From positions 62,001 through 126,000 of the IMG/VR virus record IMGVR_UViG_3300032245_001746: DNA of 64,000 nt; one strand, 5' to 3'. A program made the position numbers and the translations under genes. This document shows, one piece after another, positions 20,602-64,000 of this stretch; position 1 is the stretch's first letter; each line of letters starts with the position of its first letter. The notes under the pieces are model-generated. The model did no database searches. It saw only the letters and a list, made by a program, of their open reading frames with translations, and was not told where the DNA came from.

Positions 20602-20683
20602 GCGTTGATATGGCAAGTGGATAAAGCCGGGTGACTGTAAATCACTTCTTAATTGTTCGGGGGTTCGAATCCCTCTCAACGCA
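20602..20683 (+). tRNA. tRNA-Tyr(GTA)
   Basis: GCGTTGA/TCAACGC; GGTGA-CTGTAAA-TCACT; T-loop TTCGAAT. Confidence 0.9.
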
Positions 20684-20689
20684 CTTTAT

Positions 20690-20776
20690 AGATGGTTTTA
20701 CTATTGGCTAGGTTAACTTAGTTGGAAACTAAGAAGGCGTTAATTCGCTTTACAAGTTCGATTCTTGTACCATCTG
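20690..20776 (+). tRNA. tRNA-Ser(GGA)
   Basis: AGATGGT/ACCATCT, G73; CTTAG-TTGGAAA-CTAAG; long variable arm. Confidence 0.85.
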
Positions 20777-20784
20777 TTTTATTT

Positions 20785-20866
20785 AGAGTCGCTTCAATGT
20801 GGGTATTGGAGAAGTCTGTAAAACTTCTGCCCTATGGGCAAAACAGTTCGATTCTGTACGACTCTA
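20785..20866 (+). tRNA. tRNA-Tyr(GTA)
   Basis: AGAGTCG/CGACTCT; GAAGT-CTGTAAA-ACTTC; variable arm TGCCC/GGGCA. Confidence 0.85.
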
Positions 20867-20880
20867 CTTGTTGTTATTTT

Positions 20881-20970
20881 AGATGGGTAGACCTATTGGT
20901 AGGTCAGATTATTTGCTAAATAATTAGGGCGGGTCAAACCGTCTTGCAAGTTCGATTCTTGTCCCATCTG
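20881..20970 (+). tRNA. tRNA-Ser(GCT)
   Basis: AGATGGG/CCCATCT, G73; ATTAT-TTGCTAA-ATAAT; long variable arm. Confidence 0.88.
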
Positions 20971-20990
20971 CTTGGTTTTTTATTTTATAT

Positions 20991-21081
20991 AGATTGGTAA
21001 CTGGACAGGCGTGCCAGCATTGTTTTGAAAACAATTGGAGCCATTGAGAAATGGCTTGGGATTCGATTTCTCACCTCTCTG
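20991..21081 (+). tRNA. tRNA-Ser(TGA), two acceptor-stem mismatches
   Basis: ATTGT-TTTGAAA-ACAAT; long variable arm; AGATTGG/CCTCTCT, G73. Confidence 0.75.
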
Positions 21082-21101
21082 CTTTGTTTATTTTATAATA
21101 T

Positions 21102-21177
21102 GGACGGTGAGCTAGTGTGGTCATTTAAGCGGAAATTTGAAAGATTTCAGAACTCAGTTCGATTCTGAGACCGTCCA
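21102..21177 (+). tRNA. tRNA-Phe(GAA)
   Basis: GGACGGT/ACCGTCC; GAAAT-TTGAAAG-ATTTC; CTCAG-TTCGATT-CTGAG. Confidence 0.85.
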
Positions 21178-21247
21178 CTTTTAAAGAATTTATAAAATTC
21201 GAACATTATTTTTCTTAAAATTAAATACGCTATTACTGTAATAGTGT

Positions 21248-21964
21248 ATGAGCAAAATAATTTATACAAAAGAAGTGTTAGAAAAAGCAGTAAAAGAAGC
21301 AAGTTACTTAACTGAAGTATTTAAAATACTTAATGCAAGACAAGGAGGAAATACTTATCAAAGAATAAAAATATTAATTAAAGAGTATAAAATAGACACA
21401 TCTCATTTTTTGAATGGAAAATATAAAGGATTTTTAAAATCTGGAATTGCTAATAAAAAATGTCATTTAAAAATCCTTGTAAATGATAAATCTAGAAATA
21501 GAAGAGAAAGTAGTTATTTATTAAAACGTGCATTAATAGAAAGTGGTCGAATTCATGTTTGTGAATGCTGTGGTTTGAAACCTGAATGGAATGGTAAAGA
21601 ATTAACACTTCAAGTTGATCATATAGATGGAAATTGGTTAGATAATAGAAAAGAAAATTTAAGATTTTTATGTCCTAATTGTCATACTCAAACAAAAACA
21701 TTTGGAAATCAAAAGGAACAAAAAAAATGTGAAAATTGTAACATGAAAATAGGAAGAAAATCTCGATGGTGTAAGCGTTGTTTTCCATTATTTGTTTTTA
21801 TAAATAAAAGAAAAGTAAAAGACAGACCAGAATTACATGTATTAAACCAAGAAGTAAAAGAACTTGGGTATGTAGGAACTGGTAGAAAATATGGCGTAAG
21901 TGATAATGCTATTAAAAAATGGATTAAAACAGAAACTAAAAAATTAAATATTACAAATAAATAG
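21248..21964 (+). CDS. HNH homing endonuclease inside the tRNA array
   Basis: CECCG..WNGKELTLQVDHIDGNWLDNRKENLRFLCPNCH; C-terminal HTH (GRKYGVSDNAIKKW). Confidence 0.9.
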   Translation: MSKIIYTKEVLEKAVKEASYLTEVFKILNARQGGNTYQRIKILIKEYKIDTSHFLNGKYKGFLKSGIANKKCHLKILVNDKSRNRRESSYLLKRALIESGRIHVCECCGLKPEWNGKELTLQVDHIDGNWLDNRKENLRFLCPNCHTQTKTFGNQKEQKKCENCNMKIGRKSRWCKRCFPLFVFINKRKVKDRPELHVLNQEVKELGYVGTGRKYGVSDNAIKKWIKTETKKLNITNK

Positions 21965-21982
21965 TAAATATAGTGTTTATAT

Positions 21983-22065
21983 GTTCGCGTGATGAAATTT
22001 GGGATACATGATGGTCTAAGAAGCCATTGCCGTAAGGCTTGCAGGTTTGATTTTTGTCGCGAACA
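21983..22065 (+). tRNA. tRNA-Leu(AAG)
   Basis: GTTCGCG/CGCGAAC; ATGGT-CTAAGAA-GCCAT; variable arm GCC-GTAA-GGC; weak T-arm. Confidence 0.75.
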
Positions 22066-22079
22066 CTTGTTGTTTTTAT

Positions 22080-22154
22080 GCTGTAGTACGCAAATAGGCA
22101 AAGCGGCAATACTTAAAATATTGTGATTCTGTCGTTCGACTCCGATCTACAGTA
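22080..22154 (+). tRNA. tRNA-Leu(TAA), short variable arm, imperfect T-stem
   Basis: GCTGTAG/CTACAGT; CAATA-CTTAAAA-TATTG. Confidence 0.7.
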
Positions 22155-22168
22155 CTTGTTATTTTTAT

Positions 22169-22242
22169 GCTCATGTGATGCAATTGGCAGACATTTCTCG
22201 TTTAAACCGAGGATCTTACAAGTTCAAGTCTTGTCATGAGCA
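22169..22242 (+). tRNA. tRNA-Leu(TAA), short variable arm
   Basis: GCTCATG/CATGAGC; TCTCG-TTTAAAC-CGAGG; ACAAG-TTCAAGT-CTTGT. Confidence 0.8.
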
Positions 22243-22251
22243 CTTTTATAT

Positions 22252-22329
22252 GCTTACGTGATGCAATTTGGTAGACATCTTTCGCTTAAAACGAAAGTTT
22301 TTTTGTAGGTTCGAGTCCTATCGTAAGCA
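22252..22329 (+). tRNA. tRNA-Leu(TAA), short variable arm
   Basis: GCTTACG/CGTAAGC; TTTCG-CTTAAAA-CGAAA; GTAGG-TTCGAGT-CCTAT. Confidence 0.85.
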
Positions 22330-22333
22330 CTAT

Positions 22334-22406
22334 CGGTCAATAACAATGATGGTTCATGTAGTCGTCTGAAGAACGACAAATCCCAGATCGTAACTGGGTT
22401 GACCGG
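22334..22406 (+). tRNA. tRNA-Phe(GAA), atypical T-loop and G73
   Basis: CGGTCAA/TTGACCG; GTCGT-CTGAAGA-ACGAC; CCCAG-ATCGTAA-CTGGG. Confidence 0.7.
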
Positions 22407-22415
22407 CTTTTATAT

Positions 22416-22499
22416 GTCCATGTGGTGAAATTTGGCAGCCACGCCAGCCTAAGAAACTGGTTCCTTAATGGAGTGTAGGTTCAAATCCTATCATGGACA
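22416..22499 (+). tRNA. tRNA-Leu(AAG)
   Basis: GTCCATG/CATGGAC; CCAGC-CTAAGAA-ACTGG; variable arm; GTAGG-TTCAAAT-CCTAT. Confidence 0.8.
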
Positions 22500-22513
22500 C
22501 TTGTTATTTTTAT

Positions 22514-22596
22514 GCCCATGTGATTGAAATTGGTAAACTTGGAAGTTTTAGAAACTTTCGCCTTCGGGCTTGCAGGTTCAACCCCTGTCGTGGGCA
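22514..22596 (+). tRNA. tRNA-Leu(TAG)
   Basis: GCCCATG/CGTGGGC; GAAGT-TTTAGAA-ACTTT; long variable arm. Confidence 0.85.
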
Positions 22597-22616
22597 CTTA
22601 TTATATTATTAAAAAT

Positions 22617-22690
22617 GGCTCAGTAGGCAACGGAAGACCACTTTTACTCAAAATAAAAGATGATTGTGAGTTCGACTCTCACCTGAGTTA
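22617..22690 (+). tRNA. tRNA-Leu(CAA), short variable arm
   Basis: GGCTCAG/CTGAGTT; TTTTA-CTCAAAA-TAAAA; GTGAG-TTCGACT-CTCAC. Confidence 0.8.
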
Positions 22691-27688: not shown

Positions 27689-28111
27689 ATGAAAAAAATT
27701 TCTTTTGATTTTGATGACACACTCGCTAATAGTATTAGTGTCCCATATTTTGGATTGGATGGCGAAATATATTATTCTGAATTACATTTTCCTATTGAAA
27801 AAATATTTAAATTTCTTAAAAAATGTCATGACAAGAATCATGATTGTATCATATTAACAGCTAGAGAAGAAAATGATAAAAATATTAATATAATTAATAA
27901 ATTTTTAAAAGATTATGGTGCATTTGATATGATTAGTAAGGTTTATTTTACTAATCATAAATATAAAGGTGATTTTATTAAAAAACATAATATTAATATA
28001 GATCTTCATATTGATGATGATAATGATCATTTAGAATCACTAAGAGAGCATAAAATAAATGGGATTTCATCATTATATGAATCTTGTATTTATGAAAATC
28101 TTGATATATGA
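27689..28111 (+). CDS. HAD-superfamily phosphatase
   Basis: ISFDFDDTL, ILTAR, K, HIDDD. Confidence 0.8.
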   Translation: MKKISFDFDDTLANSISVPYFGLDGEIYYSELHFPIEKIFKFLKKCHDKNHDCIILTAREENDKNINIINKFLKDYGAFDMISKVYFTNHKYKGDFIKKHNINIDLHIDDDNDHLESLREHKINGISSLYESCIYENLDI

Positions 28112-28199
28112 TAATTAAAGTTTACAACAAGCATTATATTTATTTTAATAAAATTTGTAAAAATTTATAAAAATATGTAAAAACATACTATATAAAGTA

Positions 28200-28781
28200 A
28201 TGAATAAAATTAAATTGTCAACCTATGCTAAAAGAAATAATCTGTGCTATCGCACTGCATATAATTACTTTCACTCCGGAACACTTAAAGGCGAACAACT
28301 TGAATCTGGTACTATCCTAGTTTATGATGATCAAAAAGATAAATCAAAAATTGAAAAAGTTGCAATTTATTGCAGAGAATCAACCTCTGAAAATTCTAGC
28401 TCTTTAAATAACCAAATTCAAAGAGTATCTGATTTTTGTACTGCAAAAGGTTGGATTATACACAAAATTATAAAAGAAATCGGAAGCGGACTAAATGATA
28501 AAAGACCAAAATTTTTATCATTATTAGAAGATACTTCAATAACAAAAATTGTTGTAGAACACAATGATAGATTTTGTAGATTTGGAATAGAACCAATAAA
28601 AATATTACTCAAATCACAAGGAAGAGAATTAATTATAATTAATGAAGTAACTAATGATAAAGAAGATTTAATTCAAGATTTTGTTTCAATAATAACATCT
28701 TTTTGTGCAAGAATTTATGAACAAAGAAGAACCAAAAAAGCAACTGAAAAACTAATCAAGGAATTAAATGAAATTAGTTGA
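28200..28781 (+). CDS. tnpA: IS607 TnpA serine recombinase
   Basis: N-terminal HTH, AIYCRES, EIGSGLNDKR, DRFCRFG, DFVSIITSFCARIY. Confidence 0.93.
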   Translation: MNKIKLSTYAKRNNLCYRTAYNYFHSGTLKGEQLESGTILVYDDQKDKSKIEKVAIYCRESTSENSSSLNNQIQRVSDFCTAKGWIIHKIIKEIGSGLNDKRPKFLSLLEDTSITKIVVEHNDRFCRFGIEPIKILLKSQGRELIIINEVTNDKEDLIQDFVSIITSFCARIYEQRRTKKATEKLIKELNEIS

Positions 28782-29970
28782 AATTCATAATTTTAAAAAG
28801 AACTCTAAACAATATAAAGAACTTGATGAAATATTATTTAAATCAAAAAATGTTTATAATTCTGCATTATATGTTTGGAGACAATATTACATCAAAGAAA
28901 ATAAATTTATTTCTTTGAATGAAACTTATCATATAATAAAAAATTATGAATGTTACAAACAACTTCCTCAAAATGTATCAACTCAAACTTTGAAATTAAC
29001 ATTTCAAAACATTAATTCTTATTTCAAAGCAATTAAATCATATAATAAAAACCCAAATAAATTTTTAGGAAAACCTAAATTACCAAAATATAAAGACTCA
29101 ATAAAAGGTAGAATTATTGCTGTTTATACTTCAAGAGTAATAAGAAAAAAAGATTTTAATAAAGGAAAAATTCAATTAACAGGATTATCTTTTTCCATTC
29201 CAACAAAAATTGAAAATTATAATGATATAAAACAAGTAAGAATAATTCCTTCAATTAATTCTATTAAAATTGAAATTGTCTATAATAAACAAGAAAAGAA
29301 AATTAAGAAGAATAAAAAATTAGCTGCAATTGATTTAGGTTTAAATAATTTATCAACACTTTGTTTTAATGAAGTAAAAAATAAACCAATAATTATAAAT
29401 GGGAAGCCATTAAAATCAATTAATCAATATTACAATAAAAAGAAATCAAAATTACAATCAAAATTACATAACAATAAAAGAACAAGTAAAAACATATTAA
29501 AATTAACAGAAAAAAGAAACAATAAAATTAAAGATTATCTTCACAAATCATCAAGATGTTTAGTGAATCAATTAGTTTCTAAAAATATATCCAAGCTCAT
29601 TATAGGATATAATAAAGGATGGAAACAAGACATTAATATTGGTAAAAAGAACAATCAAAATTTTGTAAATATTCCATTTTTACATTATATTAATCAATTA
29701 AAATATAAATGTGAATTAGAAGGGATAGAAGTAATTTTAAACGAAGAGAGTTATACGTCTAAATGTTCTTTTATTGATATGGAAGATGTTAAAAAGCATG
29801 ATTCATATGTAGGTAAAAGAATAAAAAGAGGTTTATTTAAATCTAAAGGTGGAATATTAATTAATGCAGATTTAAATGGATCGTATAATATAATGAGAAA
29901 AGTAGTTCCTAATGTTTTTAACAAGGGAATAGAGGGTTTTGTGGTAAGTCCAAAAGTGATATCGCTTTAA
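28768..29970 (+). CDS. tnpB: TnpB RNA-guided nuclease
   Basis: AIDLGLNN (RuvC-I), IIGYNKGWKQ, EESYTSK, NADLNGSYNI (RuvC-III). Confidence 0.93.
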   Translation: MKLVEIHNFKKNSKQYKELDEILFKSKNVYNSALYVWRQYYIKENKFISLNETYHIIKNYECYKQLPQNVSTQTLKLTFQNINSYFKAIKSYNKNPNKFLGKPKLPKYKDSIKGRIIAVYTSRVIRKKDFNKGKIQLTGLSFSIPTKIENYNDIKQVRIIPSINSIKIEIVYNKQEKKIKKNKKLAAIDLGLNNLSTLCFNEVKNKPIIINGKPLKSINQYYNKKKSKLQSKLHNNKRTSKNILKLTEKRNNKIKDYLHKSSRCLVNQLVSKNISKLIIGYNKGWKQDINIGKKNNQNFVNIPFLHYINQLKYKCELEGIEVILNEESYTSKCSFIDMEDVKKHDSYVGKRIKRGLFKSKGGILINADLNGSYNIMRKVVPNVFNKGIEGFVVSPKVISL

Positions 29971-30253
29971 AAGAAGATATTTACATGTTTTCTATAACCA
30001 TCATGGTAATTATCCAAAAGATTCTGTTTATATTGGTAGAGGATCTTGTTATGGTAATCCGTTCATAATAGGAAAAGATGGTACAAGAGAAGAAGTTATA
30101 AAAAAATATATTGATTTGATAGAATCTGATGAAAAGCTTAAAAAGTTAATAATACAAAGATTAAAAGGTAAAAATTTACTTTGTTTTTGTTCGCCAAAAC
30201 CTTGTCATGGTGATTATTTATTAAAAATTTGCAATGAATAAAATATATAAAAT

Positions 30254-32029: not shown

Positions 32030-32318
32030 AAACTATTTATCACTTTTCAGTTCACTTTCAAAAAGTTTCATTGTACAATTAGTTGTTAAAAAATTTTTTT
32101 GAGAATTTACTATGTTTATTTATTTGTTGCGGTTTCATGGAGAAGATGGTCCTGAAGATTTAAAAGCTACTCTTGACCGTGAGCGTCTTATTACTATTTT
32201 TAAAATCAGACGAAGATCTTTTGTCGGAAACAACAGATGGAATACATAGTCTTATGGATGGGGCGGATTACATTTGCAAGTTGTAAAATCTTTATGAATT
32301 TTATTAAGGAAAATTAAA

Positions 32319-59427: not shown

Positions 59428-59952
59428 ATGTCAACAGAGTATCTAAATAATAAATTGTTAGAAACAGCTATTTGTAATTATTTAAAAACAAGACAACAAA
59501 AAATTAAAATGGAACTTATAATGGAAGATCTTGAAGTTTCATTTAAAAAACGAGAAAAAAATAAATTAAAACAAAATTATAATTTAGAAGAATATAGAAA
59601 AATATTTCTTGAATCAAAAATAAATTACGAAATTCAACAATCAAATTTGGCAAACGCCTTTTACACACTTGCAGAACATTTAGCTAGATATGCTAAAGAT
59701 ATTATTACTGATTCTGATGATGCTATTCAAGAAAGTGTACTAACCTGCTTTGAAAAAATCGATAAATTTCATCCAAATAAAGGAAAAGCTTTTTCTTATT
59801 TTACAAGTGTAATGCTTAATAGTTCTAGACAAATGTACAGATCTTATAAAGGTTATAAATTATTGAAAGAAAGATATAAAGACTTTTTAAATTGCAAAAT
59901 AGGAGAAACTATAATTAAAAATGGAAAAGAAATAAATATTTCTGAAGATTAA
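59428..59952 (+). CDS. gp55-like late sigma factor
   Basis: YLNNK.L, LAE.LA, DDAIQE, KF.P.KGKAFSYFT. Confidence 0.7.
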   Translation: MSTEYLNNKLLETAICNYLKTRQQKIKMELIMEDLEVSFKKREKNKLKQNYNLEEYRKIFLESKINYEIQQSNLANAFYTLAEHLARYAKDIITDSDDAIQESVLTCFEKIDKFHPNKGKAFSYFTSVMLNSSRQMYRSYKGYKLLKERYKDFLNCKIGETIIKNGKEINISED

Positions 59953-60215: not shown

Positions 60216-60725
60216 TTAACATTCATCAGAAAGATATGCTCTGGCATATCTTAATGTAACATCACAACTAACAACTTCACTATTTTCCATATCTAAATCA
60301 CCAAAATCTATTTCTAATGGCCAAACGTTTTCAAATATCCAACGTTCAAGTACAGAACCAATACCATCATATAACTCTAAATAAGCGGTTTTAAAAAAAT
60401 TATTATCAACTGGATATATTGAATTTCCACTACATGGATTATAAAGTTTTTTAAACCATTCTAAAACAGGATGTTTGTTTTTTTTCAAATCATATAAAGT
60501 TAAATTAATTGGTTTCATTTCAACTTTACCTGGTATATAAATAGTTTCATTTAAATGTTCTAAAGATATTTCTTTATATGACATTTTAGGTCTTGATGCC
60601 TTGCTAGGTGGCAACGAATCAACACCAGAAGCACTTATGTTTGGAATCATAAATAACCATCTGTGTTTTTGCTTAATACAAATATCACTTTTTTCTAAAC
60701 CATAACCTAAACCCATATTTGGCAT
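60216..60725 (-). CDS. gp19-like tail tube protein (native start ATG 60725)
   Basis: RP, Y.PGK, I.LTLYD, LELYDGIG...W, WP.EIDFGDLD, VTLRY. Confidence 0.85.
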   Translation of the reverse strand: MPNMGLGYGLEKSDICIKQKHRWLFMIPNISASGVDSLPPSKASRPKMSYKEISLEHLNETIYIPGKVEMKPINLTLYDLKKNKHPVLEWFKKLYNPCSGNSIYPVDNNFFKTAYLELYDGIGSVLERWIFENVWPLEIDFGDLDMENSEVVSCDVTLRYARAYLSDEC

Positions 60726-60941
60726 AATATTATTTCCATAAAATCTAGAAAAATACATAAAAATCAACTATAATAAAGCATTAATGAATCAATTAGTTTC
60801 ATAAGAAACAAGACATTAATAATTAATTGTGTTAAAAAAAGTAGTTCCTAATGTTTTTAACAAAGGAATAGAGGGCTTTGTGGTAAATCCAAAAGTAATT
60901 TAAATTTAAATATAATATATTTACATATTTTCTAAAACCAT
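60726..60941 (+). mobile_element. 216-bp non-autonomous derivative of the IS607 element
   Basis: 60841-60941 resembles the IS right end 29902-30001; internal patches TGAATCAATTAGTTTC and GAAACAAGACATTAATA match tnpB; similar left end; CAT at both junctions. Confidence 0.88.
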
Positions 60942-60966
60942 AAATTCCTCACTATTTACTTATAAT

Positions 60967-61001
60967 AGAAAAAGCCAACAAATTATTTGTTGGCTTTTTC
61001 T
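60967..61001. terminator. Intrinsic terminator after upstream tube gene
   Basis: AGAAAAAGCCAACAAAT/ATTTGTTGGCTTTTTCT. Confidence 0.8.
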
Positions 61002-61022
61002 TTAAATTAATTAATTTAAACT

Positions 61023-61652
61023 TTATGCACCAAAATTGTTACCTACGATACCAGTAGGTAACCCACCACCAGTACCACCAGAAGATGTATCTCCGCAAGA
61101 AGAATAACATCCAAATGGAGTATATTCTGGACATAATGATTTATACTGTAAACCTGTATATCTCAAAGTCAATTCAATAGTAGCTGGATCATTAGAATCA
61201 TTAGCTAATTCTCCAAATTTTACAGATTTTGGCCAACAATTTAATAAAATCCATTGTTCTAAAGGTGTACCTGCCGTGTCATACATAACAATAATACCAG
61301 TACCAGAATAATCACTTGCTTTTGAAGCTATAGGCATTCTAACTGGATCATTAAAGTTGTAAACTGATGCTAACCAAGACCATAATGGTCTTTGATCAAT
61401 ACTAGCAACATCATAGTAAGTTACAGTTAATGTGTCTAAAGTTGTTTTTCCTGGAATAAATGTTTTAGCATTCAAGAAATCAATTTGAGTTTCTTCTGTA
61501 TCCCATGATGGTCTGCTTGCCATCTTAACAAAACTTTCACCTATCTTTGTAGTCCCGTTACCAGAACACAAATTTATCACAGAAAAGGTGTAAGCATATT
61601 GTCTTTTATAAATTAGGTTACCAGAACCTAGTTTTCCTATTCCCATATTCAT
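61023..61652 (-). CDS. gp19-like tail tube protein
   Basis: SRPS, FIPGK, VTYYD, MYD..G..LEQW.L..CWPKSVKFGEL, LTLRY; follows sheath. Confidence 0.88.
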   Translation of the reverse strand: MNMGIGKLGSGNLIYKRQYAYTFSVINLCSGNGTTKIGESFVKMASRPSWDTEETQIDFLNAKTFIPGKTTLDTLTVTYYDVASIDQRPLWSWLASVYNFNDPVRMPIASKASDYSGTGIIVMYDTAGTPLEQWILLNCWPKSVKFGELANDSNDPATIELTLRYTGLQYKSLCPEYTPFGCYSSCGDTSSGGTGGGLPTGIVGNNFGA

Positions 61653-61671
61653 AATTTTATTTTCCTTTTAA

Positions 61672-64000
61672 TTAAAATGCTGTTGTATCTTCAGTGAAAG
61701 ATCCTGTTCTATGAACACTAAATTCTATATACATAAATTCAACAGAACGTGTTGGTTGTATTCCGATTCTTGCTCTGAATTCATTTCTGTCTATAACATC
61801 TGGTGTATTTAAAGAAGTGTCAGCTTGTATTTGGAAATCATAAAGACCACGTCCAATTTGTACCTCTCTCAAAATACCAGAAGCAATTTCTTCAAATCCT
61901 CTTCTGAAGTCGTCATCATTTGGTTCAAATAACAAAGATCTGCTTGCAACTCTTATTCTTTTCTCAATTGAGAATAATAATCTTCTAACATTGATTCTAT
62001 CAAGAGCAGTAGGTTTTCTTTGCAATGTCTTTTGACCAAACGCTATAAATCCTGTGTCTACGAATTGAATAATTGGATTGATAGCATTTCTGTTTCCATA
62101 CATTGAATCTCTTTCTTCTAATGTAGGTCTGCTATAAACACCTGTTACTCCTGGCAATTGTCCTCTTGACATACCTGCTGGGGCAAACCAAGGTTCAGAT
62201 AAAGCATCACTTCTTGCAATCATAGCCATTACAGATCCTGATGGTGGAACCCACACATCAATTCTGTTGAAATTATCACGAATCTTGACCCAGGGCCAAT
62301 ACAATGCAGCAAAGTCACTATCAATCTTAGTCGAATTTAAAGGATGTGCTCCATTTTGCCATTTAATTATTTCATTTACGCCTAATCCAAATGGAGGATC
62401 AATAATTGCCAAACAATCCATTCTATAGTTTTGACAAACATCAATTAATCCCAAAACAACACCTGTGCTAGAACGACCAGGAGCAGCAAGTAAGTCGATA
62501 TCAATTTGTTCTGGATCGCTTAATGCGAACAAACCAGTTGAACCAACCACACTTCCGATAACTAAACTATCTTGAAGATCAGGATCAGATGGAATACCAT
62601 CTGTTCCACCACTTAAAGAATAAGTTCCGTTTTTAGGTGGTGCAACTGCTAATGTATTATCAATTGCTGTTATGAAATCTGAATTTCTTATCAAATAAGT
62701 TTCTACATAATATGTACTTGTTTGATCTTTAGTTAAATTACCATGACTTTCAACTTGAATACCATTGTTGTAGACTTCAATTTGAAAAGTTCCTTCTCTA
62801 ACATCATTTTTTACTACAACTTGAGTTGTATTACCATCAATACCAGGACTATCAGCAGTAATTGTTAAACTATTGCTATCTGACACAGCAGAACCAGTTA
62901 CAATTCCTAATTCTTGAATGTTTACATCACCAGTCACGCCTGAAGTTGTAGCTCCAGTAGATGTAGTTCCGTCAAAATCAAATATTTCAAATGCTGTAGA
63001 TTCTGATTTAACCAATATTTTAGCATCTTTTCCACTATGTAATGTGACTAAAGTTACATTATTTGCAGCATAAAGAGCGTGTGTTGTAAGGTTTACTGTT
63101 ACACCATTAATTACAGGTCCATTTGCAACTGATCCACCAACTGCGTAAAATCCGCCCATTATGGTTCCATCAGTGATTTGACTGTTAATTTCATTAACTA
63201 TGTCTGCAGTTGAGTTACTTAATCCTTCTAATGCTTCTAAATCAATTACTTGAACAGTATTATCAATTGCTGCATTTTCGCTACCATCTACTACAACTAA
63301 AAGTTGTAAATTTGAAGCACCAGTAAAATCCCAAGTTCCATCTACAGCATAACCAGTGCTGTATCCAGCAGCACCACTTGTTGTTTCTGCTTGAGTCATT
63401 TCTGTTCCTAAACTTATCATTCCAGAAAGTTTAGAATCTTTTTTAACTACGTGTGAATTACTCCAAGTTCTAGCTGCACCTAAAGTAATCGTATTTGTTG
63501 TGTAATTTACTGAAGTAATACTTGATGAAACGTTGTTTACAGTGATAGAATCGCCAGCGTAAAACATTGAAGCATCTGTAACTATCAAAGTTGTAGAGCT
63601 TGATCCTGAACCAACTGCAGTTGTACTAACTGTACCAGGAACTGCTTTTCCATATAATGAATTTTGAACACTGACTAATTCCAAAGAACTATCTGGTCCA
63701 TAAGAAAAAGTTGTTGAAACTTTTAATTTATTATCAGTTGAGCATGAAAATTCAATTCCGTCTACAGAAGATGATAATTGATCATTTAATTCTTCTACAA
63801 GTTCTGAACAAGTATATTTTCCAGCAGGAACTAACAATGTTTTAACAGATTCAATTCCGTTAAGTTTCCATTTAAAAAATGCATCAACATCAAAAACATA
63901 ACTTCCAGCAACGTTTGATTGTAAAACAATCGAAGCTCCAGCAACTGGAACATTCACAGATGCTGTTTTTGCAGCTTCATCATTTACAGAATTTGTTTCT
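61672..64000 (-). CDS. gp18-like contractile tail sheath protein (5' end outside window)
   Basis: AALYWPW, VPPSG, PWFAPAG..RG, INPI, FGQKTL, DRINVRRL, FEPND; frame open to the window edge. Confidence 0.93.
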   Translation of the reverse strand, partial: ETNSVNDEAAKTASVNVPVAGASIVLQSNVAGSYVFDVDAFFKWKLNGIESVKTLLVPAGKYTCSELVEELNDQLSSSVDGIEFSCSTDNKLKVSTTFSYGPDSSLELVSVQNSLYGKAVPGTVSTTAVGSGSSSTTLIVTDASMFYAGDSITVNNVSSSITSVNYTTNTITLGAARTWSNSHVVKKDSKLSGMISLGTEMTQAETTSGAAGYSTGYAVDGTWDFTGASNLQLLVVVDGSENAAIDNTVQVIDLEALEGLSNSTADIVNEINSQITDGTIMGGFYAVGGSVANGPVINGVTVNLTTHALYAANNVTLVTLHSGKDAKILVKSESTAFEIFDFDGTTSTGATTSGVTGDVNIQELGIVTGSAVSDSNSLTITADSPGIDGNTTQVVVKNDVREGTFQIEVYNNGIQVESHGNLTKDQTSTYYVETYLIRNSDFITAIDNTLAVAPPKNGTYSLSGGTDGIPSDPDLQDSLVIGSVVGSTGLFALSDPEQIDIDLLAAPGRSSTGVVLGLIDVCQNYRMDCLAIIDPPFGLGVNEIIKWQNGAHPLNSTKIDSDFAALYWPWVKIRDNFNRIDVWVPPSGSVMAMIARSDALSEPWFAPAGMSRGQLPGVTGVYSRPTLEERDSMYGNRNAINPIIQFVDTGFIAFGQKTLQRKPTALDRINVRRLLFSIEKRIRVASRSLLFEPNDDDFRRGFEEIASGILREVQIGRGLYDFQIQADTSLNTPDVIDRNEFRARIGIQPTRSVEFMYIEFSVHRTGSFTEDTTAF

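What the first reader, a model, noticed from the sequence alone, without database searches (positions are those of the whole stretch)
60723..60958. Miniature IS607 inserted exactly at the start codon of a tail-tube gene, separating it from its promoter and RBS
Seen: a 216-bp internally deleted copy of the IS at 28135-30001 lies between two CAT triplets (60723-25, 60939-41), each an ATG on the minus strand. Removing it gives TAAATAGTGAGGAATTT-ATG-CCA-AAT-ATG-GGT, a late-type promoter and strong RBS joined to the tube ORF. As inserted, that RBS drives only MVLENM*, and the tube ORF is left with a weak GGAAA from the IS left end. Inference: either a tolerated insertion in a second tube paralog, or a switch that TnpA can excise in trans.
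Basis: partly seen in the sequence, partly recalled or inferred. Interest (0 to 1): 0.7.

Follow-up and report, generated by a model that had tools for sequence, protein, structure and literature searches.

The report
Miniature IS607 transposon before megaphage tube gene
A 216-bp protein-less relative of the phage's own IS607 transposon (TnpA/TnpB) has jumped, in this one strain of a >500-kb phage, between a tail-tube gene and its promoter and ribosome-binding site; sister strains carry the exact empty site, and the element still holds the transposon ends and the guide-RNA-type module of its family.

Summary
Window 60726-60941 is a 216-bp protein-less IS607-family element. It sits between the late-type promoter plus strong RBS (60945-60964, minus strand) and the ATG (60725-60723) of the second gp19-like tube paralog.

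Closely related strains carry exactly the predicted empty allele. These are contigs L013 and L014 (96-98% identical flanks) and contigs in two wastewater sequencing runs.

The element is not a simple deletion of the resident IS (28135-30001). Its right end is 94% identical to an IS in another metagenome (L133), against 88% to the resident copy.

It keeps both transposon ends with phased subterminal repeats, the tnpA promoter-like site, and two short islands that are among the longest nucleotide-invariant runs of tnpB in this IS group. It also keeps the 3' module that shows covariation like a TnpB guide-RNA (omega RNA) scaffold. That module scores as well as the full copy's against a model built from independent relatives.

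Best reading: a selfish, non-autonomous insertion that is tolerated. TnpA could probably move it in trans, and it may still guide TnpB to the empty allele. The left end supplies tube2 with an average-strength RBS.

Nothing supports a regulated switch. Guide-RNA function is inferred, and two stem-breaking substitutions argue for partial decay.

The parts
60726..60941 (+). 216-bp protein-less IS607-family element (mini-IS), in the same orientation as the full IS. Boundaries are ambiguous within the 5-nt repeat CATAA (60723-27 / 60939-43).
60726..60784 (+). Left end. It carries three roughly 10-bp-phased copies of a (C/T)A(T/G)AAAA-type subterminal motif, a promoter-like site TAGAAA-17-TATAAT (60746-60774) homologous in position to the tnpA promoter, and the tnpA ATG remnant at 60784-86.
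   Evidence: The strict motif is expected 0.19 times per 60 nt. The promoter-like site alone is not above shuffles.
60785..60821 (+). Two islands of tnpB-internal sequence (60785-60800 and 60805-60821) joined by ATAA. Their inner ends GTTTC/GAAAC can pair; in full elements they lie 42 nt apart.
   Evidence: Both are 100% identical in the window IS, L131 and L132. In L133 the first is 16/16 and the second aligns over 13/13. They lie within the longest (19 nt) and one of the five longest 4-way invariant runs of tnpB.
60834..60941 (+). Right-end module. It contains stem 1, the invariant AGAGG, stem 2, a short hairpin, two inverted subterminal motifs and the terminal AACCAT. This is the candidate omega-RNA scaffold.
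   Evidence: Model R1, 59.6 bits. 7 of 9 modelled pairs covary among relatives. 94% identical to L133. Motifs.
60942..60961 (+). The 20 nt right of the right end, which would be the guide part of an omega RNA. It is complementary to the tube2 SD/promoter strand and is unique in the 320-kb record.
   Evidence: Guide position by analogy with IS607 TnpB (PMC10690162, PMC11061315).
60945..60964 (-). Displaced expression signals of tube2: late-type TATAAGTA (60957-60964) and SD GAGGAA (60945-60950). They now drive only the 6-codon ORF at 60941-60921.
   Evidence: The same promoter and SD directly abut the ATG in L013/L014.
60969..60999 (.). Perfect palindromic hairpin with T-runs on both strands, after tube1. 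It would also end a + strand transcript leaving the mini-IS.
   Evidence: Read from the sequence and conserved in position in L012, L015 and L016. Not flagged by the simple terminator scan.
60216..60725 (-). tube2, the second gp19-type tail-tube paralog (169 aa). It is intact. An SD-like GGAAA from the left end lies at 60733-60737, 9 nt before the ATG, and an in-frame upstream ATG lies at 60758-60756.
61023..61652 (-). tube1, a gp19-type tail-tube protein (209 aa).
61672..63957 (-). Tail sheath gene; the ORF may begin further upstream.
28135..30001 (+). Resident full IS607-family element: tnpA 28200-28781 (serine transposase), tnpB 28768-29970, right-end module 29895-30001. It is inserted after CAT inside a DUF4326 gene (28108-28134 / 30002-30241).

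Best explanation
The feature is a non-autonomous (MITE-like) member of an IS607-family transposon group that circulates in large phages.

A serine transposase (TnpA) integrated it at an AT/CAT core. That core happens to be the complement of the tube2 start codon. The insertion occurred in one strain of a phage of at least 530 kb, and sister strains keep the empty site.

It pushes the late-type promoter and strong SD 216 bp upstream. Tube2 must now be translated from a read-through leader using an average-strength SD (GGAAA) supplied by the element's left end. The gene remains intact, so the insertion is tolerated.

The element has lost tnpA and tnpB. It keeps both ends with phased TnpA-type motifs, so the resident TnpA could excise or move it in trans. 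It also keeps the tnpA promoter region, two short islands that are invariant at nucleotide level in this IS group, and the 3' module that behaves like the TnpB omega-RNA scaffold.

If transcribed on the + strand, that RNA would end in a guide matching the tube2 SD/promoter. The phage's single TnpB would then cut empty alleles, whether produced by excision or carried by co-infecting sister phages, and recombination would copy the element back in (restorative homing).

Shown: identity, boundaries, polymorphism, retained parts, intact TnpA/TnpB.
Inferred: trans-mobilisation, transcription, guide function, the effect on tube2 level.
For: Insertion and polymorphism:
- The exact empty allele is in L014 and, with one base changed, L013. 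Their flanks are 96-98% identical and the break lies at 60938/9 -> 60727.
- Contigs of runs X2 and X5 show a 'skips 216' joint.
- More distant relatives (L012, L015, L016) have tube1, a hairpin, 20-30 nt, then the tube2 ATG with no element.

Family:
- TnpA matches the IS1535 and ISC1926 serine transposases (E 8e-26).
- TnpB carries PF01385 and PF07282.
- D189, E327 and D368 are near-invariant in 24 homologues.
- There are no inverted terminal repeats (5-7 of 20 matches) and no duplication beyond the shared core.
- Phased subterminal motifs occur at both ends, as described for IS607 (PMC6188088).

Guide-RNA-type module:
- 7 of 9 modelled pairs show compensatory changes among 27 relatives.
- The model hits only the two elements, with equal scores.
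- The core 60 nt differ at 3 positions against 10 of 45 in the rest (Fisher p = 0.014).
- The islands coincide with the longest invariant runs of tnpB.
- The guide-equivalent 20 nt is unique in the genome.

Precedents:
- IS607 TnpB cleaves the empty donor joint and restores the element (PMC10690162).
- Protein-less IS605 'PATE' elements carry omega RNAs that are used in trans (PMC10055086).

Tolerance:
- tube2 is intact, with 12 synonymous against 4 non-synonymous codon differences from L013.
- The SD from the left end is of median strength, at a spacing seen in 18 of the 183 genes that have a GGA upstream.
- The filled allele is the only one assembled, at depth 33.
Against: - There is no direct evidence of transcription, of TnpB binding or of excision. 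Only assembler contigs of the source run could be examined, and contigs drop rare variants.
- Compared with its closest full-length relative (L133), the mini has six substitutions in 105 nt, and at all six it carries A or T where L133 has G or C. One breaks a stem-2 pair (C-G to C·A) and one breaks the G-C pair of the next hairpin. This looks like decay under AT pressure.
- Single-sequence folding is no better than shuffles (z = -0.5).
- No Rfam family matches.
- The target-adjacent motif cannot be defined. The three left flanks (AAGCAT, TGGCAT, and TTCCAT in L131) share only CAT, which is also the end of every right end (AACCAT). How TnpB would spare the filled allele is therefore unexplained.
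- The element could have shrunk in situ from a full copy, so movement as a mini is not proven.
- The GGAAA SD is no better than 20% of random ATG contexts.
Confidence: 0.7

Rival explanations
1. Inert relic. A full-length L133-like IS inserted at this site and shrank in place through successive deletions. What remains is neither mobile nor a guide-RNA gene, and persists only because it is nearly neutral.
For: At least four separate deletions are needed. All six differences from L133 have A or T in the mini where L133 has G or C, and two break conserved stems. No second copy of the mini exists in the 320-kb record or in IMG/VR. No structure signal appears in single-sequence folding.
Against: The retained pieces are not random. 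They are both ends, the promoter region, the most invariant tnpB nucleotides and the covarying module, which scores as high as the intact copy's. Some other metagenomes hold 10-21% of the mini's 31-mers, while L133 shares no exact run of 31 nt or more with it (by inspection of the alignment), so closer copies may exist elsewhere.
Confidence: 0.25
2. Reversible genetic switch. TnpA excision and re-insertion toggles tube2 between strong and weak expression, to the phage's benefit.
For: IS607 excision is scarless (PMC10690162), and both alleles exist in nature.
Against: The two alleles occur in strains that differ by 2-4% elsewhere, not within one population. The source sample assembles only the filled allele. 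If the guide RNA works, TnpB would destroy the excised state. Nothing couples excision to any signal.
Confidence: 0.05
3. Selected regulatory insertion. The element is kept because it lowers or delays tube2 synthesis, through a longer leader, a weaker SD or an antisense RNA from the left-end promoter, or because the left end evolved GGAAA to rescue translation.
For: GGAAA is specific to the mini; the full IS has TTAAAA at the homologous place. The + strand promoter-like site would give an RNA antisense to the tube2 leader.
Against: One strain only. Relatives at every distance examined (46-99% identity) keep the promoter and SD directly at the ATG. The SD match is no better than 20% of random ATGs.
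Confidence: 0.05
4. Assembly artefact: a chimeric join through a repeat.
For: None found.
Against: Two independent assemblies hold it. The mini differs by 12% and by several deletions from the only other copy, so no repeat-collapse path exists.
Confidence: 0.01

Closest known systems
IS607-family insertion sequences (IS607, IS1535, ISC1926; CboIStron IS607 part)
   Same: Serine-recombinase TnpA with tnpB downstream. No inverted terminal repeats and no target duplication. Short phased subterminal repeats. Scarless empty site. Right end followed by the guide sequence (PMC6188088, PMC10690162).
   Different: The termini and targets are not GG. Both window right ends and the two close relatives' right ends finish in AACCAT, and the insertions follow CAT. 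This copy has no genes at all. The TnpB has its catalytic glutamate at the alternative position and no CxxC zinc finger (PMC10711439).
PATE-like non-autonomous IS200/IS605 elements that carry omega RNAs
   Same: A protein-less element bounded by transposon ends that keeps the guide-RNA scaffold and would need TnpA and TnpB supplied in trans (PMC10055086).
   Different: Those move as single-stranded DNA via a Y1 (HUH) transposase and hairpin ends. This one belongs to the serine-recombinase family and sits in a phage. I found no report of an IS607 equivalent in the papers searched.
Free-standing homing endonuclease genes and mobile introns of T4-like and jumbo phages
   Same: A selfish insert at a gene boundary in a structural-gene cluster, polymorphic between sister phages. 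The predicted spread is by cutting the empty allele in mixed infection (PMC2988022, PMC13565253).
   Different: Recognition here would be by an RNA guide, with the nuclease encoded 31 kb away. No cutting has been shown.
IStrons (IS605/IS607 fused to a group I intron)
   Same: An IS607/TnpB element placed in an expressed region where the cost of insertion must be mitigated (PMC10690162, PMC4227781).
   Different: No group I intron. The Rfam scan of the element and of the whole window finds none. Mitigation here, if any, is only an SD-like GGAAA in the left end.

Membership tests
IS607 family (the group the mini derives from) | Transposase is a serine recombinase with the IS607-type catalytic domain | tested here: met
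   Resident tnpA: PF00239; 6dgb IS1535 TnpA E 8e-26 and 6dgc ISC1926 E 6e-22. The mini itself encodes none.
IS607 family (the group the mini derives from) | Accessory tnpB (OrfB_IS605 / RuvC nuclease) downstream of tnpA | tested here: met
   PF01385 and PF07282. D189/E327/D368 are near-invariant. The mini keeps only about 28 codons' worth, with stops.
IS607 family (the group the mini derives from) | No terminal inverted repeats and no target-site duplication; scarless empty site | tested here: met
   5-7 of 20 terminal positions match. The empty allele in L014, X2 and X5 equals the filled allele minus 216 bp, with only the shared CATAA.
IS607 family (the group the mini derives from) | Short directly repeated subterminal motifs at both ends | tested here: met
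   The full left end has three strict-motif copies at positions 22, 32 and 42. The mini left end has one strict copy (position 21) plus two relaxed CATAAAA copies read by eye at about 10-bp spacing. Both right ends have two inverted copies. Expected 0.19 per 60 nt.
IS607 family (the group the mini derives from) | Termini end in GG and integration is at a GG dinucleotide | tested here: not met
   Right ends finish in AACCAT in four elements. Left flanks are AAGCAT, TGGCAT and TTCCAT. The literature states GG (PMC6188088, PMC13565253).
Omega-RNA (reRNA) gene of a TnpB system | Conserved structured scaffold at the 3' end of tnpB / the right end, supported by covariation | tested here: met
   7 of 9 pairs have compensatory changes. 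The mini scores 59.6 bits against 59.8 for the full copy. One non-canonical pair is flagged.
Omega-RNA (reRNA) gene of a TnpB system | Transcribed, bound by TnpB, and guides cleavage of a TAM-flanked target | not testable with these tools
   Only a promoter-like site and a unique guide-equivalent flank. A TAM could not be derived.
RAGATH-18-type IS607 reRNA | Match to the Rfam RAGATH-18 model | tested here: not met
   No hit at gathering or E<=10 thresholds.
MITE / non-autonomous IS derivative | Both ends of a known IS family, no transposase, with an autonomous partner in the same genome | tested here: met
MITE / non-autonomous IS derivative | Multiple dispersed copies showing that it moves as a miniature element | tested here: not met
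   Single copy in the 320-kb record. No hit to its deletion junction in IMG/VR. Only 10-21% of its words are held in other runs.
IStron | Group I intron at the left end | tested here: not met
   No intron model matches.

The most novel reading that the evidence does not exclude
The mini-IS is a stand-alone guide-RNA gene. With it, the megaphage's single TnpB has two guides: its own, and one aimed at the tube2 promoter/SD of sister phages that lack the element. The phage would then practise RNA-guided marker exclusion and homing in mixed infections. The two retained islands would show how nature trims a roughly 440-nt omega-RNA region to about 160 nt. This would be an IS607-type, AT-core, multi-guide TnpB system in a huge phage, a plausible step between transposon guides and CRISPR-like arrays.
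Probability: 0.2. Interest if true: 0.8.

Novelty: new variant of a known kind. Interest (0 to 1): 0.5.

Why it matters
It gives a clean natural pair of filled and empty alleles for an IS607/TnpB element inside a virus of over 500 kb. The autonomous copy, a protein-less derivative and the target are all known to the base.

That makes three open points directly testable:
- whether serine-recombinase IS607 elements have guide-RNA-only satellites like the PATEs of IS605;
- whether TnpB acts as a homing drive between competing phages;
- which parts of this clade's long guide-RNA region are dispensable.

It also documents IS607 relatives that use an AT/CAT core instead of the canonical GG. Finally, it shows that a structural gene can survive having its promoter and SD moved 216 bp away.

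Tried and rejected
Searches that found nothing useful:
- Megablast of the tail region against GenBank phages: no match.
- Exact search for the empty-allele 18-mer in IMG/VR: three unrelated chance hits. The real empty alleles came from the metagenome scan.
- Search for the mini's deletion junction in IMG/VR: none.
- Rfam at gathering and permissive thresholds: only tRNAs and noise. A CRISPR-DR7 hit at E 0.83 inside tnpB is not significant.
- PDB sequence search with TnpB: none.
- GTDB genomes: no TnpB above 60% identity even over short segments, so no host clue.

Analyses that were uninformative:
- Single-sequence folding of either strand of the mini: no better than shuffles.
- A first cheap-gap alignment of the two elements gave spurious blocks in the left half and was replaced by blast.
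- A regex for a CTATATA-type promoter gave little. The T4-late octamer was informative instead.

Ideas dropped:
- I first inferred a target-adjacent motif, G at -4 (GCAT) against C in the right end (CCAT), by analogy with TGGG/TCGG of the CboIStron. I dropped it when L131 showed a TTCCAT flank. The L013 variant GCCAT is therefore not interpretable as escape.
- The idea that the resident IS is the parent was rejected in favour of an L133-like lineage.
- Flank comparison of two more distant element groups gave ambiguous ends and was not pursued.

Full report
**Setting**

The window is bases 62001-126000 of a 319,857-bp IMG/VR viral record with 28% G+C and a CheckV completeness estimate of 63%. 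An ENA scaffold of 530,789 bp carries the same tail region, including the identical 216 bp, so the phage has at least 530 kb.

The minus strand at 60216-63957 encodes three genes:
- a tail sheath (PF04984, PF17482);
- tube1 (61023-61652, PF06841, phrog_4542);
- a second tube paralog, tube2 (60216-60725).

Tube2 is 29% identical to tube1 (E 2e-24). Between the two tube genes lies a perfect palindromic hairpin with T-runs (60969-60999).

**Checking the observation**

On the minus strand the hairpin is followed, in order, by:
- TATAAGTA (60964-60957);
- GAGGAA (60950-60945);
- an ATG (60941-60939) that opens only MVLENM*;
- 216 bp of foreign sequence;
- the tube2 ATG (60725-60723).

The foreign 216 bp (60726-60941, read on the + strand) matches the IS at 28135-30001 in three places. 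The last 105 bp are 88% identical (E 2e-31). Two islands are identical at 16/16 and 17/17.

The left ends are more diverged but colinear. They share the terminal CAT-(T/A)AT, A-rich repeats with a 10-bp phase, and the tnpA ATGAAT.

The bordering repeat is five bases, CATAA, so the exact crossover cannot be placed more finely.

**The empty allele exists**

A metagenome scan with tube2 returned two contigs from ENA assemblies, L013 and L014. They are 96% identical to the window over 3 kb of sheath and tube1, and 97-98% identical over tube2. Their alignment to the window breaks at 60938/9 and resumes at 60727.

L014 reads hairpin, TATTATAAGTAAATAGTGAGGAATTT, then ATG CCA AAT ATG GGT. L013 differs only in codon 2, GCA.

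Independently, assembler contigs of a wastewater DNA run (X2) and a wastewater RNA-library run (X5) laid on the window show a joint 60722->60939 that 'skips 216'. The source run (X1) has one 13.6-kb contig at depth 33 with the filled allele and no empty joint.

More distant relatives have tube1, a hairpin, 20-30 nt and then a tube2 ATG, with a conserved M-x-x-M-G N-terminus. These are L015 (60% identity, on a 546-kb contig), L016 (51%), and L012/L017 (46%; the same 9,229-bp contig found in two collections). This confirms both the start codon and the ancestral arrangement. The insertion is real, recent on the scale of strain divergence, and specific to one strain.

**What the element derives from**

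The resident IS encodes two proteins:
- A serine transposase of the IS607 type. It matches PF00239, the IS1535 TnpA structure 6dgb at E 8e-26, and ISC1926 at 6e-22.
- A 400-aa TnpB with PF01385 and PF07282.

In an alignment with 23 homologues, D189 (in the motif DLG), E327 and D368 are near-invariant. The canonical RuvC-II glutamate position reads G-Y-N. E327 lies six residues before the single Cys333. This is the 'alternative glutamate' arrangement described for the Fanzor-related TnpB lineage (PMC10711439), but here without a CxxC zinc finger.

The record holds one tnpB and two right-end modules.

The full IS is itself a strain-specific insertion. It splits a DUF4326 gene (PF14216) after codon 9. 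The N-terminal part is 28108-28134, then the IS, then 30002-30241. A contig of run X2 reads straight through the uninterrupted gene.

**The mini is not a child of the resident copy**

Protein search found closer TnpBs than any in IMG/VR, at 90%, 87%, 84% and 75% identity. DNA could be fetched for three of them.

The mini's right end is 94% identical to L133, against 88% to both the resident IS and L131.

All four right ends finish in AACCAT. The left flanks are AAGCAT (full IS), TGGCAT (mini) and TTCCAT (L131).

The shared feature is CAT, or an AT core. This departs from the GG termini and GG targets stated for IS607 (PMC6188088, PMC13565253). It also explains the position 'exactly at the start codon': CAT is the complement of ATG. 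In an 88%-coding genome, insertions that do not destroy a gene are largely confined to gene boundaries (inference; coding fraction).

**What the mini has kept**

1. Both ends. The full left end carries three copies of T(G/A)TAAAA at a 10-bp phase. The mini left end carries one strict copy (TAGAAAA) flanked by two relaxed CATAAAA copies at about the same spacing, read by eye. Both right ends carry two inverted copies. The strict motif is expected 0.19 times per 60 nt. This matches the 'short directly-repeated motifs' of IS607 ends and the 40-60 bp minimal left end of IS1535 (PMC6188088).
2. A promoter-like site on the + strand, TAGAAA-17-TATAAT (60746-60774), at the place of the tnpA promoter. 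The match alone is not above shuffles.
3. The two islands. Among four full-length elements that are 76-88% identical in tnpB DNA, 65% of alignment columns are invariant. The longest invariant run (19 nt, 29561-29579) contains island 1. Island 2 lies in one of only five runs of 14 nt or more, and a third such run is the start of the right-end module. The inner ends of the islands, GTTTC and GAAAC, can pair. In the full elements they are always 42 nt apart; in the mini an ATAA loop joins them. This is the pattern expected if the distal part of a stem-loop was trimmed, but it rests on one natural deletion.
4. The right-end module. I aligned the homologous region of 27 other elements, all viral contigs with 42-55% TnpB identity. 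RNAalifold finds two stems around an invariant AGAGG, and 7 of the 9 pairs show compensatory changes. The first stem pairs a Pro codon with a Gly codon and swaps to Gly...Pro in other clades. A covariance model of this alignment, which contains no window sequence, finds exactly two matches: the full IS at 59.8 bits and the mini at 59.6 bits.

In the mini no reading frame constrains this region, yet its 60-nt core differs from the resident copy at 3 positions against 10 of 45 in the rest (p = 0.014).

In TnpB systems, including IS607 ones, the guide RNA scaffold lies at this place and the guide is the sequence just outside the right end (PMC10690162, PMC11061315). For the mini that is 60942-60961. 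It is the complement of the tube2 SD and promoter, and it is unique in the record. A + strand transcript would then run into the palindromic hairpin at 60969-60999.

**Evidence that the guide-RNA gene may be decaying**

Against L133, the mini has six substitutions in 105 nt. At all six it carries A or T where L133 has G or C. One turns the fourth pair of stem 2 from C-G into C·A, which cmsearch flags as non-canonical. One removes the G-C pair of the following hairpin.

Single-sequence folding gives no signal on either strand, and no Rfam family matches, RAGATH-18 included.

I could not define a target-adjacent motif that would distinguish the empty site from the filled one. An early idea, G against C at -4, failed on L131.

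I therefore rate the parts separately:
- 'retains the parts' as shown;
- 'mobilisable in trans' as likely;
- 'functional guide' as about even odds.

**Consequence for tube2**

TATAAATA, the T4 late-promoter octamer, occurs 13 times in the 50 nt upstream of 398 crude gene calls, against 2.7 expected. One gene just beyond the window's high-coordinate end (minus strand, so upstream of the sheath in the tail operon) has CTATTATAAATAA...TGAGGAAT, nearly the tube2 arrangement. A 174-aa sigma-region-2 protein is encoded at 59428-59952. A late-type promoter is thus plausible but untested.

After the insertion the promoter lies 216 bp further away. The minus strand of the element has only a weak hairpin plus T7 (read), which the scan did not flag.

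The lost SD, GAGGAA, pairs with the anti-SD at -6.4 kcal/mol, which is in the top 12% of genes. The SD-like GGAAA in the left end, 9 nt before the ATG, gives -3.3 kcal/mol. That is the genome's median, although 20% of random ATGs do as well.

The usual SD of this phage is AAGGAA(A). GGAAA is specific to the mini; the full IS has TTAAAA at that place.

Tube2 is intact, and its differences from L013 are mostly synonymous, 12 against 4 codons. The gene caller behind the ENA scaffold also starts it at this ATG. The insertion is therefore tolerated, probably with reduced translation.

**Switch or selfish element**

IS607 excision is scarless, so reversion is possible in principle. Three points argue against a switch:
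- The two alleles are found in different strains, not in one population.
- Nothing links excision to a signal.
- In the characterised IS607 system, TnpB plus guide removes the empty allele and restores the element (PMC10690162).

The simplest account is a selfish non-autonomous element. Its nearest analogues are the PATE-like IS605 elements that carry omega RNAs used in trans (PMC10055086) and, functionally, the free-standing homing endonuclease genes of T4-like phages (PMC2988022).

**Generality**

In five other large phage records the model found nine modules. Eight abut a tnpB. One fills a 122-bp intergenic space in a complete 504-kb phage (L129), with no TnpA or TnpB within 1.5 kb, and is 86% identical to the right end of a tnpB elsewhere in that genome. 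Protein-less right-end modules thus recur in huge phages.

**Limits**

Only Logan contigs, not reads, were available for all runs. The host is unknown. Gene calls used for the statistics are crude: first ATG, 70 aa or longer.

Noticed in passing
window 28108-28134 and 30002-30241: The full IS splits a DUF4326 gene after codon 9 and leaves the 3' part without a start codon. A contig of run X2 carries the uninterrupted gene, so this insertion is also strain-specific. The gene's ATG overlaps the stop codon of the upstream HAD-like ORF (ATGA).
   Followed up: yes
L129 (G001:C1:285044-285143, minus strand), a complete 504-kb viral record: A second protein-less right-end/omega-RNA-type module (45.9 bits, E 1.7e-5) fills a 122-bp gap between two co-directional genes. 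It is 86% identical over 91 nt to the right end of a tnpB elsewhere in that genome. No left end was recognised.
   Followed up: partly
L132:1980-2075: Nested or tandem elements. A second IS (tnpA then tnpB) begins inside the right-end module of the first, just after the first stem, truncating the first TnpB at ...GI*. Its left flank ends in TAT rather than CAT.
   Followed up: partly
L013:3001-3006 (equivalent to window 60720-60725): One sister strain has ATG GCA instead of ATG CCA. This is a change at the 4th base left of the insertion point (GCCAT instead of GGCAT). It cannot be interpreted because the target-adjacent motif is unknown.
   Followed up: no
window 28768-29970 (TnpB): The canonical RuvC-II glutamate is replaced (GYN), and an invariant E327 sits six residues before a lone Cys. 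There is no CxxC zinc finger. This is the 'alternative glutamate' type otherwise discussed for the Fanzor-related lineage, here with DLG rather than DPG.
   Followed up: partly
G000 record, mostly outside the window; one near copy at window 32064-32079: The overlapping heptamers of a motif AGTTTGATTGTACAAT(G) each occur upstream of about 33-43 of 398 gene calls, 5-8 fold over expectation. This is probably a promoter or operator class different from the late-type TATAAATA.
   Followed up: partly
window 59428-59952: A 174-aa protein with only sigma-70 region 2 lies next to the tail genes, and the T4 late octamer TATAAATA is enriched upstream of genes (13 against 2.7 expected). This suggests gp55-like late transcription in this megaphage.
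   Followed up: partly
window 20602-22690: A cluster of six tRNA genes.
   Followed up: no
L134 (ENA scaffold of 530,789 bp): The same tail region, with the identical mini-IS, lies on a 530-kb scaffold. The IMG/VR record of 320 kb is therefore a fragment of a phage of at least 530 kb.
   Followed up: partly
window 29576-29626: The part between the two islands gives a weak, non-significant match to a CRISPR repeat model (CRISPR-DR7, E 0.83). It ends in GGAUGGAAAC.
   Followed up: no
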